Notes under the pieces: model-generated
What the model was told of the DNA's origin: nothing
Database searches by the model: none
Seen by the model: only the letters and a program-made list of their open reading frames with translations
Shown here: positions 10,342-18,180 of the stretch, in pieces
How positions within the stretch are numbered: the first letter of the stretch is position 1
Layout of the letters: each line of letters opens with the position of its first letter
Assembly (NCBI RefSeq): GCF_022045235.1
Contig: NW_027266319.1
Span: 27,590,001 to 27,654,000 of the forward strand
Reading direction: 5' to 3'
DNA length: 64,000 nt
From: Haliotis cracherodii
Taxonomy: Eukaryota
Translations under genes and position numbers: made by a program

Positions 10342-10500
10342 GGGGCGGCGGGAGGATAACCCAGTGGTTAAAGCGTTTGCTCCCCGGGATTGATTCCACA
10401 CATAGGTAAAAAGGCAGAACCCCATTTCTGATGTTTCCCCTCGTACTATTGCTGGAATAATGCTATAGGCGACATAAAACCCCACTCCCCTACTCACTCA
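10342..10500 (+). mobile_element. SINE family B (degenerate) inserted at the stop codon of the kringle exon
   Basis: Matches 24673-24839. TSD CTCAAAAGAAGGGG (10332-10345) / CTCAACAGAAAGGG (10497-10510). Confidence 0.75.
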
Positions 10501-10748
10501 ACAGAAAGGGACGCTACATTCCTCCCAACGAACGCTGGGGTCCACCGTATAACACCACGGCACTGTGTGCCCCGGCATCCGACAGTAGTTGCTCTCGTCA
10601 ACTAGGGCAGGGTCCCCGCGTGACATCCCCCTGGGAAAATACACACGATCGTGTGGGATGTCAGTGTCCCACCTCTGACATGTCTTGCCAGTCTTGGTAA
10701 TGCTCAGGGTTCCGAGATAGAGCGCTGATGTCGTGTAGCATAGCTCCT
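10498..10748 (-). CDS. Terminal exon 3 of paralog B: kringle domain
   Basis: CYTTSALYLGTLSITKTGKTCQRW...NYCRMPG..PWCYTVDPSVRWEECSVPFC* shows the six-Cys kringle pattern. Acceptor T-tract-CAG at 10749-10750, phase 1. Confidence 0.9.
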
Positions 10749-11042
10749 CTGAAAAAAAAAACAGACGAAGTTCATGACTGTGCAATAACAAATGGACGCC
10801 TCCTCCTCCATTAAAATCTGTTGTATGCGCCTGAAGTAATAACGAGTGCGAACTCGGGTCTACCTGAAGCGCTCATTAAATCCCCACCATGATCATCATC
10901 ATCAACAGCAGCAGCAGCATCAAATGATTCCTGAGAGGAAATAAATCTCCCGACCACGTTCCTAAAAAGAGGTAACAAGTGCTAGAGCTAGAGATAAGAG
11001 GAAACAAGACTCTATTAACCCAAGGAAAATTAATATTGCACA

Positions 11043-11312
11043 GGGGGAACGGGTGGCCCAGTCGTCTAAGGCGCCGCGATTCACCCTGCAGAGTTACGTC
11101 CACGCCAGAAACATATCATTGTGATTTCGAATCGCGGTTCGCCCCGATTATGTTTCTAGGTTTGTCAGAACCATACCCGTGCTCGTGGGCTTCACCGAAG
11201 TGGTAAACGTCTGAGGCCTGCATCACTTCGGGCTTTCTTCCCACATTAAGCTGACACAACGTGATATAACTGGAATACTGTTAAAAGCGGCGTTAAACCC
11301 AACTCACTCACA
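11043..11312 (+). mobile_element. tRNA-derived SINE family A
   Basis: Head GGGTGGCCCAGTCGTCTAAGGCG, (ACTC)n tail, TSD ATATTGCACAG. Confidence 0.9.
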
Positions 11313-11510
11313 CATATTGCACAGTTGATTTGCATTTAAAATATGAAAAAAGAAAATGTATGACATTAAAACATGTACATAGGAAAATAAAACACATGAG
11401 ACTTAATATGTCTTAATGAATACTCGTGGGTACACCATTGGTACAAAAACAATGTGACGATGACCATGAAATTGGAAAGACGTGGGCGTTTCAATCACAG
11501 GTTGTCATTT

Positions 11511-11685
11511 AGTGAGTGAGTGAGTGAGTGAGTATGGTTTTACGCCGCTTTTAGCAATATTCCAGCAATGTCACGGCGGGGGACACCAGAAATGGGCTTC
11601 ACACATTGTACCCATGTCGGTAATCGAACCCCGGTCTTCGGCGTGACGAGCGAACGCTTTAATCTCTAGGCTACCCGACCGCCCG
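11511..11685 (-). mobile_element. tRNA-derived SINE family B
   Basis: Reverse complement of 24673-24839. 12-bp TSD GGTTGTCATTTA. Confidence 0.9.
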
Positions 11686-12352
11686 GTTGTCATTTACAAA
11701 GAAAATAAGTGGTCTATAAGTCCTGCCTTCTTAGTCAGCTTTCTGTGCTGTGTAGTTTGGTGAGTCCCGAGTCGTGAGCAGTCTCAATCATTCACCGGCA
11801 AATGTAAAAACAATCCTTTAAGTGCTTCATTTTCCAATATCTAAATCAACATCTTTTGAAAGTAAACATGCAGATATCTATCCCGTCAAAGTGAGTTGTG
11901 GATGGTAAACACAGTTTAACTATGTAACTAGACGGATGAACTTCAACGGTAAGCTCTGAAAGGACCTGGCTTCGTGGGTTATCGAAATGAAATAATTAAT
12001 TTTGCTTGACGCGGCTGGGCGAAAGGGTAAAGAACAAGCCAACTAGTGATTGGGAGAAAGAGCTGCACGTCATCATCACAATGACACGCAGTCAGCCAAA
12101 TCCAAGAGTCTGACCACCTGACCCTTATTAACCGACTGTGACGGCATACATAGGATACTGTGGACTGCCCATGGATACAGGGATGTTATACTCCAGCAAA
12201 AATGACTTGAATAGCTGTATTTATCTACCAGATATCTGCCAGGCTGTCTAAGTCCATGACAAGAAAGTGGAGACATGCAGAATACAAAGGTCAACATCAC
12301 CAGTTTGGCCCGTGAGTCACCGCCTTCTGGCATAAGGCTCAAGGCAGTTTAT

Positions 12353-12694
12353 TACACCCAGTAGTGTGAATTCATACAGGTTAAACATGACCAAGACTAA
12401 AATATACATTAAAAAACAACACGCGTGTGCATATACAATATTACGCACAGGGCTTGGCATGACCAGCCGATTGTAAAGACTGGCCCATCTTACCACCTGT
12501 TTTGGCGAAGTAAGGGTCAAAGTACACCCAGTAGTTTGAATTCATACAGGTTAAACATGACCAAGACTAAAATATACATTAAAATACAACACGCGTGTGC
12601 ATATACAATATTACGCACAGGGCTTGGCATGACCAGCCGATTGTAAAGACCGGCCCATCTTACCACGTGTTTTGGCGAAGTAAGGGTCAAAGTA
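12353..12694. repeat. Tandem duplication, 170-bp unit x2
   Basis: TACACCCAGTAGT... starts at 12353 and again at 12523; the two units are near-identical. Confidence 0.93.
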
Positions 12695-15125: not shown

Positions 15126-15212
15126 ATCCAGATAGTTAACAAAGGGGTAAGTTCCTCCTTGGGTTGGATGGGGGCCAAACCGATATGGCTGCCAACGGAT
15201 TACACGTGTACG

Positions 15213-15496
15213 AGTGAGTGAGTGAGTGAGTTGGGTTTAACGCCGCTTTTAACAGTATCCCAGTTTTATCACGGCGTGTCAGCTTAATGTGTGAGGAAAG
15301 CCCCAAGTGAAGCAGGTCTCATATGTTTACCACTTCGGTGAAACCCACGAGCACGGTTATGGTGCTGACAAACCTAGAAACATAATCGGGCAAACCGGGA
15401 TTCGAACCCACAATCATAGGTTTCTGGCGTGCCCAAGGGACTCAACTCTGCACAGCGAATCGCAGCGCCTTAGACGACTGGGCCACCCGTGCCCCC
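15213..15496 (-). mobile_element. tRNA-derived SINE family A, full length
   Basis: Reverse complement of 45944-46224. Confidence 0.92.
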
Positions 15497-16515
15497 ACAT
15501 GTACGTGTGACTTTCAGAGGATCTTACTATCCAGAATTCAAAGTTATTCAAAAAGGAATATATTAAAGAGTATGACTACGTTAATGCTTAAGTAAATAGT
15601 GTACCAAGTAGTGTTTATGTTAGATGTTTCACTACAATAAGATACGACGTAGACCGCGGCTAAGATCGACGGATGTGAGGTCCGGAACTTGCCTACATTT
15701 TCCGGCTGCATAGTCACGTGACACAGCATGTAGCGAATTTGATTGCAACATATTTACAATGGTTGCTTTTAAACAATATTTCTGCATTTGGAAAACAAAA
15801 CATATCATTGATTTTGACGCAATGCCAATACCTAACCTCACTACTTTTTCTGTAGTTTTGTGTGACACATGGGGAATTTAACTGATGCGAGTTGGCAACG
15901 AAAACCATCTTGTGTGGTGTTAAGAAGGTCGGTATGCAGTCCGTGTGTTGTTGCTTGTTGCTAGAAACTGCTAAGGTAAAACAATCGATTATTTGTTCAA
16001 GATTCGAGAGATTTTAAGACTTTGTATAAGAAAAAAAGATAGTGTAGTTTACAAAATAATTAGATACAGCATGTCCCAAATAAGGATTTTCTGTCGTTAA
16101 AAAAATTAAATTCATAAATCTTTTAAAAGATTAAATGTCAACACGATTACTAAATCTTAAGTAAATATGTTTTAAAATGAGCTATACGAGGAGCTTTGGG
16201 GAATAAAACACTTATTTTTAAAGGGAGAGGTATCATATGTGGAAATAATAAGATGTCACTTTATGAGTCGACAGTGCCTTTAAGAAAGTGGTCAAATGTA
16301 ACATCTGTTATATTTAGGAGAATACTTTCTTAGTAAATTACAAACTATAGAACTGTTTCGGGTTGGGTTGTGTGACTGATTAAAACCCACACTCTCAGAG
16401 TGAAACACCTAATCGCCAGCACTCAAAGTACAGCGATCTATCCCACTCAGCTACCGAGGCTGGAAGTCCGACAGGTGGTAGTCTGGATCACGTACTGTGT
16501 GTACCCCTCTGATTT

Positions 16516-16680
16516 AGTGAGTGAGTAAGTGAGTGTGATTTTAGGCCGCTTTTAGCAACATTCCAGCAATATCACGGCGGGGGACACCAGAAATGGGGTT
16601 CACACATTGTACCCGTGTCGGGAATCGACTCTGGGTCTTCGGCGTGACGAGCGAACGCTTTAACCACTAGGCTTCCCGAC
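16516..16680 (-). mobile_element. tRNA-derived SINE family B
   Basis: Matches 11511-11685. Confidence 0.9.
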
Positions 16681-16869
16681 TAAATTTCTGTTCAAAATGT
16701 CACAAACAATTAGAATACATTCTGCTACACCTTCATTAACATTATCAGATAGACCGTAGATAACCACATTATTTTCCCCTGCTATATTGTTCCTGATTTT
16801 ATTTCAATTCCATTCTCAGTCTATTCTAATCTGTCCTCAAGTTTCTTCAAACCCGTTTCGTCACCTGGT

Positions 16870-17352
16870 CATACTGGTGACATGTGACTCTCTACCGTAC
16901 CTTGGTGGCATGTGGATCTGTACCATACTGGTGGCATGTGGATCTGTACCATACTGGTGACATGTGGATCTGTACCATACTGGTGACATGTGGATCTGTA
17001 CCATACTGGTGGCATGTGGATCTGTACCATACTGGTGACATGTGGATCTGTACCATACTAGTGGCATGTGGATCTGTACCATACTGGTGACATGTGGATC
17101 TGTACGATACTGGTGGCATGTGGATCTGTACGATACAGGTGGCATGTGGATCTGTACCATACTGGTGACATGAGACTCTCTACCGTACCTTGGTGGCATG
17201 TGGATATGTACCATACTGGTGACATGTGGATCTGTACGATACTGGTGGCATGTGGATCTGTACCATACTGGTGACATGTGGATCTGTACCATACTGGTGA
17301 CATGTGACTCTCTACCGTACCTTGGTGGCATGTGGATCTGTACCATACTGGG
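16870..17352. repeat. 26-bp minisatellite array (~18 units), same family as 1-1455, in intron 1 of paralog B
   Basis: Same consensus unit. An array-specific 28-bp variant (…GACTCTCTACCGTACCTTGGTGG) occurs at ~16886, 17174 and 17306. Confidence 0.96.
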
Positions 17353-17850
17353 GACACAGTCGGATAGTGTAATGTTAGTGACCAAGTTAGGAGCTACCCC
17401 GTTGGGTTTAACGTCATTTTGAACAGTATGTTCACGATACATGAATATGACGACGTCTTAGCTTAATGTGGGAGAAAAGTTCGACGTGATGCAGATATTT
17501 GCCACTTTGGTGAAACCCAGGACCACGGGTGTGATGCTTACAGACCGCGGTTACATCTGGTAGGTTAACTAGTGACTGGGATCAATGAGTGTCCCATCTC
17601 CAAGTAGTGAATGGGTACCCGGTAGGATTAGGTGACATGTGATTGCTAGCATCCGACATACACTTGAGTTCTCTCCATGGAGATAAAAAATGTCAGTGCA
17701 CATGGATTAATGGTCATTAATTATGGTCCGACACTGACACACCCCTGGAACTCGACCTTGCAAGAGTTGACGCTTAATGACACTGCTTACTTTTATTATT
17801 ATCATGATTGTCATTTGTATCATTATATTTGTATAATTATTATTACCTAC

Positions 17851-18180
17851 CGATGGCATATACGACGCGCTTGCATGGTTCCAGCCAGAGGCAGACATCA
17901 TTCCAGAAGGAGCCGTTGTCGAGTTGTCGTAGTTGAGCTCGCATTGTCCCGCTTTGAAGTTCAAGCTGACGCAGCGAGACTGCTGCAAACATGACGTCAC
18001 ACAGTCCTGTAGGGTGAGGGTCTGAAGCACGAGGTAGACTGACCCCACGAGTCTACTGCCAGCCAGGAGCCCGGGGGTGTTAACCTCTCGACTGCATGTC
18101 CCCGTGACTTGACTCCCCGTGACCTGACCACACCCTGTCATCAGCTCCACAAGCAACATTGTTGTCAGAAAGGTTTTCAT
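17851..18180 (-). CDS. Exon 1 of secreted PAN-EGF-like-kringle protein, paralog B (gene model join 18180-17851, 13140-13056, 10748-10498; 221 aa)
   Basis: Signal-like MKTFLTTMLLVELMTGCG followed by a PAN domain. Phase-0 donor TCG|GTAGGT at 17850. The three exons sum to 666 nt with an open frame. Confidence 0.85.

What the first reader, a model, noticed from the sequence alone, without database searches (positions are those of the whole stretch)
10498..18180. Hidden three-exon gene for a small secreted PAN-EGF-like-kringle protein (HGF NK1-like layout, no protease), tandemly duplicated
Seen: exon 1 (signal peptide + PAN, phase 0), an 85-nt exon missed by the ORF track (4-Cys EGF-like, phase 0 to 1) and a kringle exon (phase 1, ending in a stop) splice into an open 221-aa frame with GT-AG sites. 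A paralogous exon 1 lies 16 kb downstream in the direction of transcription (2040-1726). Established: PAN followed by kringle is the N-terminal receptor/heparin-binding arrangement of plasminogen, HGF and MSP, and the HGF NK1 isoform has only these two domains. Inference: this is an invertebrate family of small secreted ligand or recognition proteins with a similar architecture plus an EGF-like spacer, expanding in tandem, with unknown function (immunity, gamete or matrix interaction are possible).
Basis: partly seen in the sequence, partly recalled or inferred. Interest (0 to 1): 0.8.

Follow-up and report, generated by a model that had tools for sequence, protein, structure and literature searches.

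The report
Small abalone PAN-kringle protein genes
A real three-exon abalone gene, one of five neighbouring copies, encodes a small, probably secreted protein made of a PAN domain, half an EGF domain and a kringle; it is already in the automatic annotation, but nobody has studied what it does.

Summary
On the minus strand, exon 1 (18180-17851, signal-like start plus PAN), an 85-nt exon 2 (13140-13056, four Cys, EGF-like) and exon 3 (10748-10498, kringle, then stop) have GT/AG sites and one open 221-aa frame. Each piece is identical to RefSeq XP_071083453.1, "plasminogen-like" of Haliotis cracherodii, so the gene is not hidden.

It is one of five paralogs within 105 kb. All five have the same three exons, 20 of 20 canonical splice sites and intact frames, and all are annotated. 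Relatives exist in three other abalone species. A 31-37% identical subfamily on another chromosome has the same exon plan, shown in the one gene checked.

No protease or transmembrane exon follows: the stop comes right after the last kringle Cys in every copy. The EGF call is weak (half a domain, below Pfam's cut-off). Likeness to HGF NK1 is in layout only.

Exons 2-3 are under purifying selection; exon 1 looks homogenised among copies.

RNA evidence is inconclusive: one run covers exons 2 and 3 but not unique intron sequence, and no junction was listed.

Function is unstudied. I infer a non-enzymatic secreted binding protein. Ordinary, modest interest.

The parts
17851..18180 (-). Exon 1 of copy B: ATG, signal-peptide-like start, one conserved N-terminal Cys (C29), PAN domain with four core Cys, Ser/Thr/Ala-rich tail; ends in phase 0
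   Evidence: Sequence and GTAGGT donor. PAN_1 E 6.9e-06, 26.3 bits. Equals residues 1-110 of P0011. An in-frame TAA lies 7 codons upstream of the ATG.
18097..18126 (-). 15-nt tandem duplication inside exon 1 that adds five residues (QVTGS) near the predicted signal cleavage site; specific to this copy
   Evidence: Read. Only P0011 carries the insert among the 15 sequences of A1.
13141..17850 (-). Intron 1 (4710 nt), with a 26-nt minisatellite (16870-17356) and highly repeated transposon fragments
13056..13140 (-). Exon 2, 85 nt, phase 0 to 1: four-Cys module with spacing C-x4-C-x5-C-x8-C (first half of an EGF); needed to keep the kringle in frame
   Evidence: Sequence and splice sites. Conserved in 5 of 5 paralogs at 82-100% DNA identity. 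EGF PF00008 hit in 4 of 5 copies, E 0.0018-0.034, model positions 1-23 of 32, below cut-off. dN/dS 0.11-0.27.
10749..13055 (-). Intron 2 (2307 nt), with a 40-nt minisatellite (12869-13015), a 170-nt duplication (12353-12694) and transposon fragments
10498..10748 (-). Exon 3, phase 1: one complete six-Cys kringle, with TGA directly after the last Cys
   Evidence: Kringle PF00051 E 1.3e-17, 64.3 bits. dN/dS 0.19-0.52. Equals residues 140-221 of P0011.
1726..2040 (-). Exon 1 of paralog A (XP_071083454.1, P0002); its exons 2 and 3 lie left of the window
18228..18468 (-). Upstream block conserved among the paralogs at about 77-86% identity; candidate promoter or 5' UTR, function not tested
   Evidence: blastn of paralog flanks.

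Best explanation
What it is (shown). Window 18180-10498, minus strand, is the black abalone (Haliotis cracherodii) gene for RefSeq protein XP_071083453.1, 221 aa. It is one of five paralogs on one chromosome. It belongs to a wider abalone family of proteins of about 213-232 aa. All share one plan: exon 1 carries a signal-like start, one N-terminal Cys and a PAN domain; an 85-nt exon 2 carries a four-Cys half-EGF; exon 3 carries one kringle and the stop.

How it most likely works (inferred). The protein is secreted, disulfide-rich and has no catalytic domain, so it acts by binding. The PAN domain and the kringle each give a binding surface. The most variable positions among family members lie in kringle loops, so I expect the copies to differ in what they bind. 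The kringle keeps the aromatic groove but lacks the acidic pair of lysine-binding kringles, so I do not expect classical lysine or fibrin binding. The mature protein has 15 conserved Cys, an odd number. That leaves one thiol free for a covalent dimer or a link to a partner.

My best guess for the role is a soluble recognition or bridging factor in haemolymph, mucus or matrix. My odds: gene and protein as described 0.95; secreted non-enzymatic binder 0.8; the recognition or bridging role 0.35.
For: - Exons, phases and GT/AG sites were read directly.
- PAN_1 and Kringle score above Pfam's cut-offs.
- All five models match RefSeq proteins piece by piece (names).
- Five PAN exons and five kringle exons are paired on contig C56. 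Exon 2 lies between them in 5 of 5 copies.
- All 20 of 20 splice sites are canonical, and all frames are open.
- dN/dS is 0.11-0.27 for exon 2 and 0.19-0.52 for exon 3.
- 1:1 orthologs in H. rufescens exist for four of the five copies.
- The same exon plan, including an 85-nt exon 2, occurs in the 36%-identical gene for P0130 on contig C45.
- Outside the exons and their near flanks, paralogs share only the upstream block (18228-18468) and repeats.
- Of the 15 Cys, 14 are invariant and one is at least 90% conserved in 22 sequences.
- The most variable positions (145, 172, 174, 198, 200) are in the kringle.
- Where plasminogen kringle 4 has its DADKG loop, the family aligns without an Asp pair (alignment, sequences).
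- pI is 5.4-7.4.
Against: - No transcript evidence was obtained. In one search only one of four runs (X4, RNA by guess only) covered exons 2 and 3. The 10748/13056 joint was not among the 15 of 963 joints shown.
- No member from a transcript assembly turned up in the word searches. The one Logan member seen (P0169) is an unspliced read-through of a relative's exon 1.
- The signal peptide was judged by eye only. Its hydrophobic core holds an acidic residue in most members.
- The tissue of expression is unknown, so the proposed role is a guess.
- Low dS in exon 1 makes its dN/dS (0.40-2.31) uninformative.
Confidence: 0.6

Rival explanations
1. Growth-factor-like ligand. The protein is a functional analogue of HGF NK1: a small PAN-kringle agonist that dimerises and signals through a cell-surface receptor.
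For: The layout is PAN followed by a single kringle without a protease. By language-model features it lies near a 174-aa 'Hepatocyte growth factor' cluster (score 0.86) and chordate Kringle/PAN clusters (0.90, 0.88). An odd conserved Cys could make a dimer.
Against: The PAN part gives no significant match to the HGF or plasminogen N domains in a profile search of PDB sequences (0.9 and -0.3 bits). There are 61 residues and a four-Cys module between the last PAN Cys and the first kringle Cys. The pI is acidic to neutral, whereas NK1 is a basic heparin binder (recalled). Five fast-diverging copies fit recognition better than one conserved signal. No receptor was looked for. Atlas scores under 0.9 are leads only.
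Confidence: 0.1
2. Reproductive protein. It is a gamete-coat, sperm or egg-jelly binding protein evolving under sexual conflict, as several abalone fertilisation proteins do.
For: The family is lineage-restricted and locally duplicated, with fairly high dN/dS (0.34-0.59 summed over the exons). Variation is concentrated in loops. That abalone are known for fast-evolving gamete proteins is recalled, not tested.
Against: There are no expression data. No dN/dS above 1 was seen outside the homogenised exon 1. No paper links kringle proteins to abalone gametes (listings and passages only).
Confidence: 0.15
3. Protease-system modulator. It is a decoy or adaptor that binds substrates or zymogens of extracellular proteases through the PAN domain and kringle, as angiostatin or apolipoprotein(a) compete with plasminogen.
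For: PAN and kringle are the substrate- or cofactor-binding modules of plasminogen, prekallikrein and factor XI (established knowledge). The genome holds at least 58 kringle exons. Bivalve 'plasminogen' or 'apolipoprotein(a)' transcripts rise in haemocytes after repeated Vibrio contact (PMC6697025, passages read). Those transcripts are not shown to be relatives of this gene.
Against: The kringle lacks the acidic pair needed for the classical lysine-dependent competition. No partner protease is known, and no protease gene is linked in the window.
Confidence: 0.15
4. Silent or dying gene copies. The models are predicted from sequence alone and are not expressed.
For: No spliced read or transcript-derived protein was found. 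All database members come from genome annotation.
Against: Five of five frames are intact with 20 of 20 good splice sites. dN/dS is below 1 in exons 2-3. Intact 1:1 orthologs exist in H. rufescens, and relatives exist in four species. Run X4 covers exons 2 and 3 but not the four repeat-free intron bins.
Confidence: 0.05

Closest known systems
HGF NK1 (the natural N-domain plus kringle-1 isoform of hepatocyte growth factor)
   Same: A PAN-type domain is followed by one kringle, with no protease, and the protein is small and presumably secreted. The Atlas places it near a 174-aa HGF cluster by features (0.86). The kringle matches HGF kringles (68-69 bits).
   Different: It is a stand-alone gene, not a splice isoform. 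There are 61 residues with a four-Cys half-EGF between the last PAN Cys and the first kringle Cys. The PAN part is not significantly similar to the HGF N domain. It has an extra N-terminal Cys, and its pI is 5.4-7.4. The kringle lies in one exon, whereas vertebrate kringles are split by an intron (recalled).
Plasminogen N-terminal part (PAN/apple domain plus kringle 1), the source of the RefSeq name 'plasminogen-like'
   Same: The order of PAN then kringle is shared. The kringle scores 48-66 bits against each plasminogen kringle.
   Different: It has one kringle instead of five and no serine protease. The PAN match is not significant (0.9 bits). It has no Asp pair where kringle 4 has its lysine-binding acidic centre (alignment; residue roles recalled).
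EGF-kringle units of urokinase, tPA and factor XII, and of bivalve 'plasminogen-like' proteins (P0148, P0236)
   Same: An EGF-type module lies directly in front of a kringle. The Cys spacing and the G-S-Y-x-C motif resemble the bivalve EGFs (for P0148, for P0236).
   Different: Only the first four of the six EGF Cys are present. The Pfam EGF score is below the cut-off. No protease follows. The vertebrate architectures are recalled, not tested.
Bivalve PAN-kringle proteins (Mytilus 'plasminogen' P0184, 394 aa; Crassostrea virginica P0255 and P0257)
   Same: These are molluscan proteins with PAN and kringle and no protease. In P0184 a short Cys module lies between the two domains. Identity is 30-33% over 63-82% of the query.
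   Different: They carry extra domains: a full EGF and two more kringles in one, a Sushi domain in the others. They are longer, and orthology is not shown.
Single-kringle secreted mini-proteins of the same genome (earlier finding s1-845154)
   Same: They are small abalone kringle proteins in a local gene cluster, annotated under borrowed names and unstudied.
   Different: They have no PAN domain and no four-Cys module. I did not examine them.

Membership tests
Kringle domain (Pfam PF00051) | Score above Pfam's gathering cut-off over nearly the whole model | tested here: met
   64.3 bits against 34.3, model positions 7-79 of 79. 58-62 bits in six full-length members.
Kringle domain (Pfam PF00051) | Six Cys in the kringle spacing, with the NYCR...PWCY...RWE.C core | tested here: met
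   C142, C162, C194, C204, C216 and C221 are conserved in 22 sequences. The motifs are seen.
PAN/apple domain (Pfam PF00024 PAN_1) | Score above the gathering cut-off and four core Cys | tested here: met
   26.3 bits against 21.4 for exon 1. C60, C64, C70 and C80 are invariant. Of the six members scanned, two paralogs (P0013 at 19.7 bits, P0004 at 20.3 bits) fall just below the cut-off.
PAN/apple domain, six-Cys apple type | An outer disulfide joining the N- and C-terminal ends of the domain | not testable with these tools
EGF domain (Pfam PF00008) | Six Cys and a score above the cut-off | tested here: not met
   Only four Cys. 14.9-19.0 bits against 21.5 in 4 of 5 copies and no hit in the fifth. 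Model positions 1-23 of 32. No EGF hit at E 0.1 or below in six full-length proteins.
Plasminogen-related growth factors (HGF, MSP) and the NK1 isoform | N domain specifically related to the HGF or plasminogen N domain | tested here: not met
   Family profile against PDB sequences: the PAN region scores 0.9 bits on plasminogen and -0.3 bits on HGF, neither significant.
Plasminogen-related growth factors (HGF, MSP) and the NK1 isoform | Short form arising from a gene that also encodes four kringles and a protease-like domain | tested here: not met
   The stop comes right after the single kringle in 5 of 5 copies and in P0130. A GT after the stop is present in only 3 of 5 copies. There are no further conserved blocks.
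Plasminogen-related growth factors (HGF, MSP) and the NK1 isoform | Binding to a MET-type receptor and to heparin | not testable with these tools
   This needs a binding assay. The only relevant observation is the acidic to neutral pI.
Lysine-binding kringles (plasminogen K1 and K4 type) | Acidic pair (Asp55 and Asp57 in K4 numbering, recalled) beside the aromatic groove | tested here: not met
   The window protein has GHTV where K4 has DADKG. The other four copies also lack an Asp pair. The Trp, Tyr and Trp of the groove and the Arg before the last Trp are kept.

The most novel reading that the evidence does not exclude
Abalone independently built an NK1-type ligand. On this reading it is a stand-alone PAN-kringle protein that forms a covalent dimer through its odd, conserved N-terminal Cys and signals through a cell-surface receptor. 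Five fast-diverging copies would then give different specificities. That would be a convergent invention of the HGF-NK1 principle outside chordates.
Probability: 0.07. Interest if true: 0.6.

Novelty: new member of a known kind. Interest (0 to 1): 0.3.

Why it matters
It matters modestly. The gene and its protein are already public as RefSeq models, so no gene was discovered. This work adds five things:
- The borrowed names (plasminogen-like, prothrombin-like, HGF-like, apolipoprotein(a)-like) hide one coherent abalone family of small PAN, half-EGF, kringle proteins.
- The family has a fixed three-exon plan that is older than the split between its two chromosomal clusters.
- The kringle is probably not of the lysine-binding type.
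- An odd conserved Cys hints at covalent pairing.
- Exon 1 is kept alike among the copies while the kringle loops diverge.

PAN next to kringle is usually discussed as a feature of vertebrate plasminogen and HGF. This molluscan version, probably assembled separately, is a small data point for domain-shuffling studies. It is also a candidate recognition molecule for abalone immunity or reproduction work.

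Tried and rejected
RNA junctions. One search for sequencing runs found no run on record as RNA. The shares of 0.07-0.09 turned out to be intron transposons, not exons. Read laying (window 10300-16299, runs X1, X16, X10 and X4, likeness 90) was swamped by repeats. 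Only X4 covered exon 3 (bin depth 46.8) and exon 2 (44 and 20.7), with depth 0 in the repeat-free intron bins 11700-12099, 13300-13699 and 15900-16099. Only 15 of 963 joints were shown, and none was 10748/13056. This neither confirms nor refutes splicing. Exon 1 lay outside the 6000 letters allowed.

As a weaker substitute I read the ESM Atlas's own model of the identical sequence. TM was 0.51-0.55 to molluscan PAN/Sushi clusters and 0.39-0.40 to plasminogen, MSP and HGF clusters. These are leads only.

A donor after the stop. GTGAGT follows the TGA in the window copy, but a GT follows in only 3 of 5 copies. I rejected it as a conserved splice site.

More exons. blastn of paralog flanks found only the three exons with short flanks, an upstream block and repeats.

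Poly(A) signal. The first minus-strand AATAAA after the stop is at 8995-8990, 1.5 kb away. The 3' end is not defined.

Relatives outside Haliotis. The big profile search gave 4852 proteins at E 0.001 or below. Only the best 150 are shown, mostly multi-kringle proteins. Of these, 4 align from the PAN part to the kringle end: three abalone proteins (P0007, P0098, P0130) and one unnamed Logan protein with two kringles (P0125). Weaker PAN-kringle relatives may sit below rank 150, so I do not claim absence outside abalone.

Papers. Six searches found no paper on these abalone proteins. I saw listings, and passages of PMC7333891, PMC9229212, PMC3517415, PMC6697025, PMC9125321 and PMC2762978. Supplementary tables of abalone transcriptome or proteome papers, which I could not open, might list these genes.

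SignalP was not available. The signal peptide was judged by eye.

Full report
The sequence. On the minus strand the ATG at 18180 opens a frame that runs to a GTAGGT donor after 17851 (330 nt, phase 0). An in-frame TAA lies seven codons upstream of the ATG. At 13140 a ttcag acceptor opens an 85-nt exon that ends before GTGATG at 13056. At 10748 another ttcag acceptor opens a 251-nt exon that ends in TGA at 10498. Exon 1 ends in phase 0 and exon 3 starts in phase 1, so the 85-nt exon is needed to keep the kringle in frame.

Domains, searched exon by exon. Exon 1 gives PAN_1 at 26.3 bits against a cut-off of 21.4. Exon 3 gives Kringle at 64.3 bits against 34.3, covering model positions 7-79 of 79. 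Exon 2 gives only weak EGF-type hits: EGF 15.7 bits and EGF_CA 16.0 bits, both below cut-off. Scanning exon 2 of all five paralogs gave EGF in 4 of 5, at E 0.0018-0.034, always on model positions 1-23 of 32. The module has the spacing C-x4-C-x5-C-x8-C of the first four EGF cysteines and lacks the last two. I call it a half-EGF. It fails membership of the EGF family as Pfam defines it.

It is already annotated. A word search with the exon-1 part found ten proteins, all from Haliotis and 174-217 aa long. The contig length given for the H. cracherodii hits, 70,419,761, is that of the window's contig. The cluster look-up listed XP_071083453.1, 'plasminogen-like [Haliotis cracherodii]', 221 aa (P0011). 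Compared piece by piece, exon 1, exon 2 and exon 3 equal residues 1-110, 111-138 and 140-221 of that record, and the split codon gives residue 139. The gene is real as a model, but it is not hidden.

The family.
- Searching the window's own genome with the kringle exon gave 58 matches at E 0.001 or below. Five are on contig C56 at 77-100% identity, and the next best is 49%.
- The PAN exon gave 20 matches. Five are on C56 at 86-100% identity, and the next best is 40%.
- The ten exons pair up into five genes between 27.503 and 27.608 Mb. Three lie on the plus strand and two on the minus strand, and the two groups point towards each other.
- The window holds copy B whole and exon 1 of copy A (2040-1726).
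- Exon 2 lies between the PAN and kringle exons in 5 of 5 copies, at 82-100% DNA identity.
- All 20 of 20 internal splice sites are AG or GT. The frames are open and give 216-221 aa, and the stop follows the last kringle Cys in every copy.
- All five equal RefSeq proteins piece by piece. Those proteins are named plasminogen-like, uncharacterized (twice) and prothrombin-like (twice).
- Between paralogs, similarity is confined to the three exons with short flanks, an upstream block (18228-18468), two minisatellites and transposon pieces. I saw no candidate for a further coding exon.
- A GT follows the stop in only 3 of 5 copies, so the GTGAGT after the window's TGA is not a conserved donor.

Selection and history.
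- By Nei-Gojobori counts on the in-frame part of each exon, dN/dS is 0.11-0.27 for exon 2 and 0.19-0.52 for exon 3. This indicates purifying selection that is not strict.
- Exon 1 behaves differently. Its dS is only 0.03-0.10, against 0.06-0.67 for exon 2 and 0.18-0.51 for exon 3. With so few changes its dN/dS (0.40-2.31) says little.
- I read the low dS as homogenisation of exon 1 among the copies, probably by gene conversion. This is an inference and no formal test was run.
- A maximum-likelihood tree of 21 family proteins pairs four H. cracherodii copies (B, E, A, C) 1:1 with H. rufescens proteins with starred support. All ten proteins of these two species sit in one clade, apart from those of H. 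asinina and H. rubra. The five-fold set is therefore older than the split of the two Californian species. Its relation to the copies of the other two species is unresolved.

Wider relatives.
- A profile of 15 members was searched against 1.84 billion representatives and gave 4852 proteins at E 0.001 or below. Of the best 150 listed, only 4 align from the PAN part through the kringle. These are the family's own representative (P0007), two further abalone groups (P0098 and P0130, named) and one unnamed two-kringle protein (P0125).
- A profile word search added more abalone members of 213-222 aa (P0175, P0177, P0178, P0180). It also found a few bivalve proteins with PAN and kringle but other extras: Mytilus P0184 (394 aa, with a full EGF and two more kringles) and C. 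virginica P0255 and P0257 (with a Sushi domain).
- The gene for P0130 lies on contig C45. I fetched its three exons. Exon 1 ends in phase 0 at the aligned position, exon 2 is again 85 nt, and exon 3 holds the kringle with the stop directly after the last Cys.
- The exon plan is therefore older than the split of the two clusters, which are 31-37% identical.
- Only 150 of 4852 hits were visible, so I do not claim that the strict architecture is absent outside abalone.

What the protein looks like.
- In 22 aligned members, 14 Cys are invariant and one more is at least 90% conserved. One follows the signal-like start, four are in the PAN core, four are in the half-EGF and six are in the kringle.
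- Fifteen is odd, so one Cys has no partner within the chain unless a pairing is unusual. Either C29 closes the PAN domain onto C116, as in six-Cys apple domains, and one Cys of the half-EGF is free, or the half-EGF pairs internally and C29 is free.
- Where plasminogen kringle 4 has the loop DADKG before P-W-C (alignment), the window protein has GHTV, and the other four copies also lack an Asp pair. The role of those Asp residues in lysine binding is recalled knowledge. The aromatic residues of the groove and the Arg before the last Trp are kept.
- The positions with the most residue types among 15 members (145, 172, 174, 198, 200) are all in the kringle. The PAN part is the least variable region.
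- The pI of the five proteins is 5.4-7.4.
- The signal peptide was judged by eye only. The window copy alone carries a 15-nt tandem duplication that adds QVTGS near the likely cleavage site.

Comparison with NK1 and plasminogen. The family profile hits PDB chains only through the kringle: plasminogen, HGF, apolipoprotein(a), prothrombin and ROR1/2. The PAN region scores 0.9 bits on plasminogen and -0.3 bits on HGF. The ESM Atlas holds this exact sequence. By features its nearest clusters are chordate Kringle/PAN proteins (0.90, 0.88) and a 174-aa HGF cluster (0.86). By its own model, the best TM scores (0.51-0.55) are to molluscan PAN/Sushi clusters, and 0.39-0.40 to plasminogen, MSP and HGF clusters. 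So the protein shares the layout of NK1, PAN then one kringle and no protease. It fails the tests for being a member: no specific N-domain relation, no parent gene with more kringles and a protease domain, and a 61-residue spacer with an extra module.

Expression was not settled. No run on record as RNA held the stretch. In the one read-laying run (window 10300-16299, four runs), the signal was dominated by intron transposons, with depths of 10^4 to 10^5. Only run X4, whose RNA nature is a guess, covered exon 3 and exon 2. It left the repeat-free intron bins at zero. The junction 10748/13056 was not among the 15 of 963 joints printed. Exon 1 could not be included within the 6000-letter limit. 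All database members come from genome annotation. The one Logan-derived member (P0169) is an unspliced read-through of exon 1 of P0130.

Literature. Six full-text searches found nothing on these abalone proteins. From passages only:
- Kringle domains occur in a limpet mucus astacin (PMC7333891).
- They occur in a membrane-bound flatworm adhesion protein (PMC9229212).
- Transcripts named 'plasminogen' or 'apolipoprotein(a)' rise in mussel haemocytes after repeated Vibrio contact (PMC6697025).

None of these is shown to be related to this family. I did not test that note.

Verdict. It is an unstudied member of the large class of PAN- and kringle-bearing extracellular proteins. My best reading is a secreted, non-catalytic binding protein whose kringle loops diversify among copies. 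Its role is open. Interest is modest.

On the joined step. I gave my own joined model to no search or fold. A script did join the exons to test the frame. Full-length work afterwards used the identical database record P0011. The details are under Tried and rejected.

Noticed in passing
window 1-1458 and 16870-17356; L027 about 1508-2362: The same 26-nt minisatellite sits in intron 1 of copies A (56 units), B (18.5 units) and C. It produces long spurious ORFs such as 16861-17442 (193 aa) and 733-1461 (242 aa).
   Followed up: partly
window 12869-13015; L025 about 4800-10000; L003 80-750: A 40-nt minisatellite lies just downstream of exon 2 (3.7 units in copy B). In intron 2 of copy E it is expanded to more than 5 kb.
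   Followed up: partly
window 17851-18180 and 1726-2040, and exon 1 of the three other copies: Exon 1 has dS 0.03-0.10 among paralogs, against 0.18-0.51 for exon 3. Similarity fades about 60-190 nt into intron 1. This looks like gene conversion limited to the PAN exon. No formal test was run.
   Followed up: partly
G000:C45:34972233-35052187 (L029-L031, L012, L019, L021, L022): A second cluster holds three PAN exons and three kringle exons, matching three RefSeq proteins on that contig (P0130, P0177, P0178). They are 31-37% identical to the window protein. The one gene I read has the identical exon plan.
   Followed up: partly
window 11100-11700, 13700-13900, 14100-15500: Intron stretches have contig depths of 10^4 to 10^5 in all four runs laid, so they are very abundant transposon or SINE-like repeats. 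The element at 11517-11684 recurs at 16518-16680 and in the other copies.
   Followed up: no
window 18228-18468; L026 121-335: An upstream block is conserved among the paralogs. In copy D a unit of about 75-84 nt from it is present three times in tandem. It is a possible promoter or 5' UTR element.
   Followed up: no
window 9926-10147: A TG/CA-rich microsatellite lies about 350 nt downstream of the stop codon. It gives Cys/Val-rich pseudo-ORFs.
   Followed up: no
window 28240-29094, 34380-35234, 42352-43206: There are three intronless 284-aa tropomyosin ORFs. They are the subject of other findings of this scan.
   Followed up: no
whole genome G000, for example C14:1.51-1.59 Mb: At least 58 kringle exons were found in the genome. 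About two dozen sit in one 80-kb stretch of contig C14, so abalone has a large kringle expansion.
   Followed up: no
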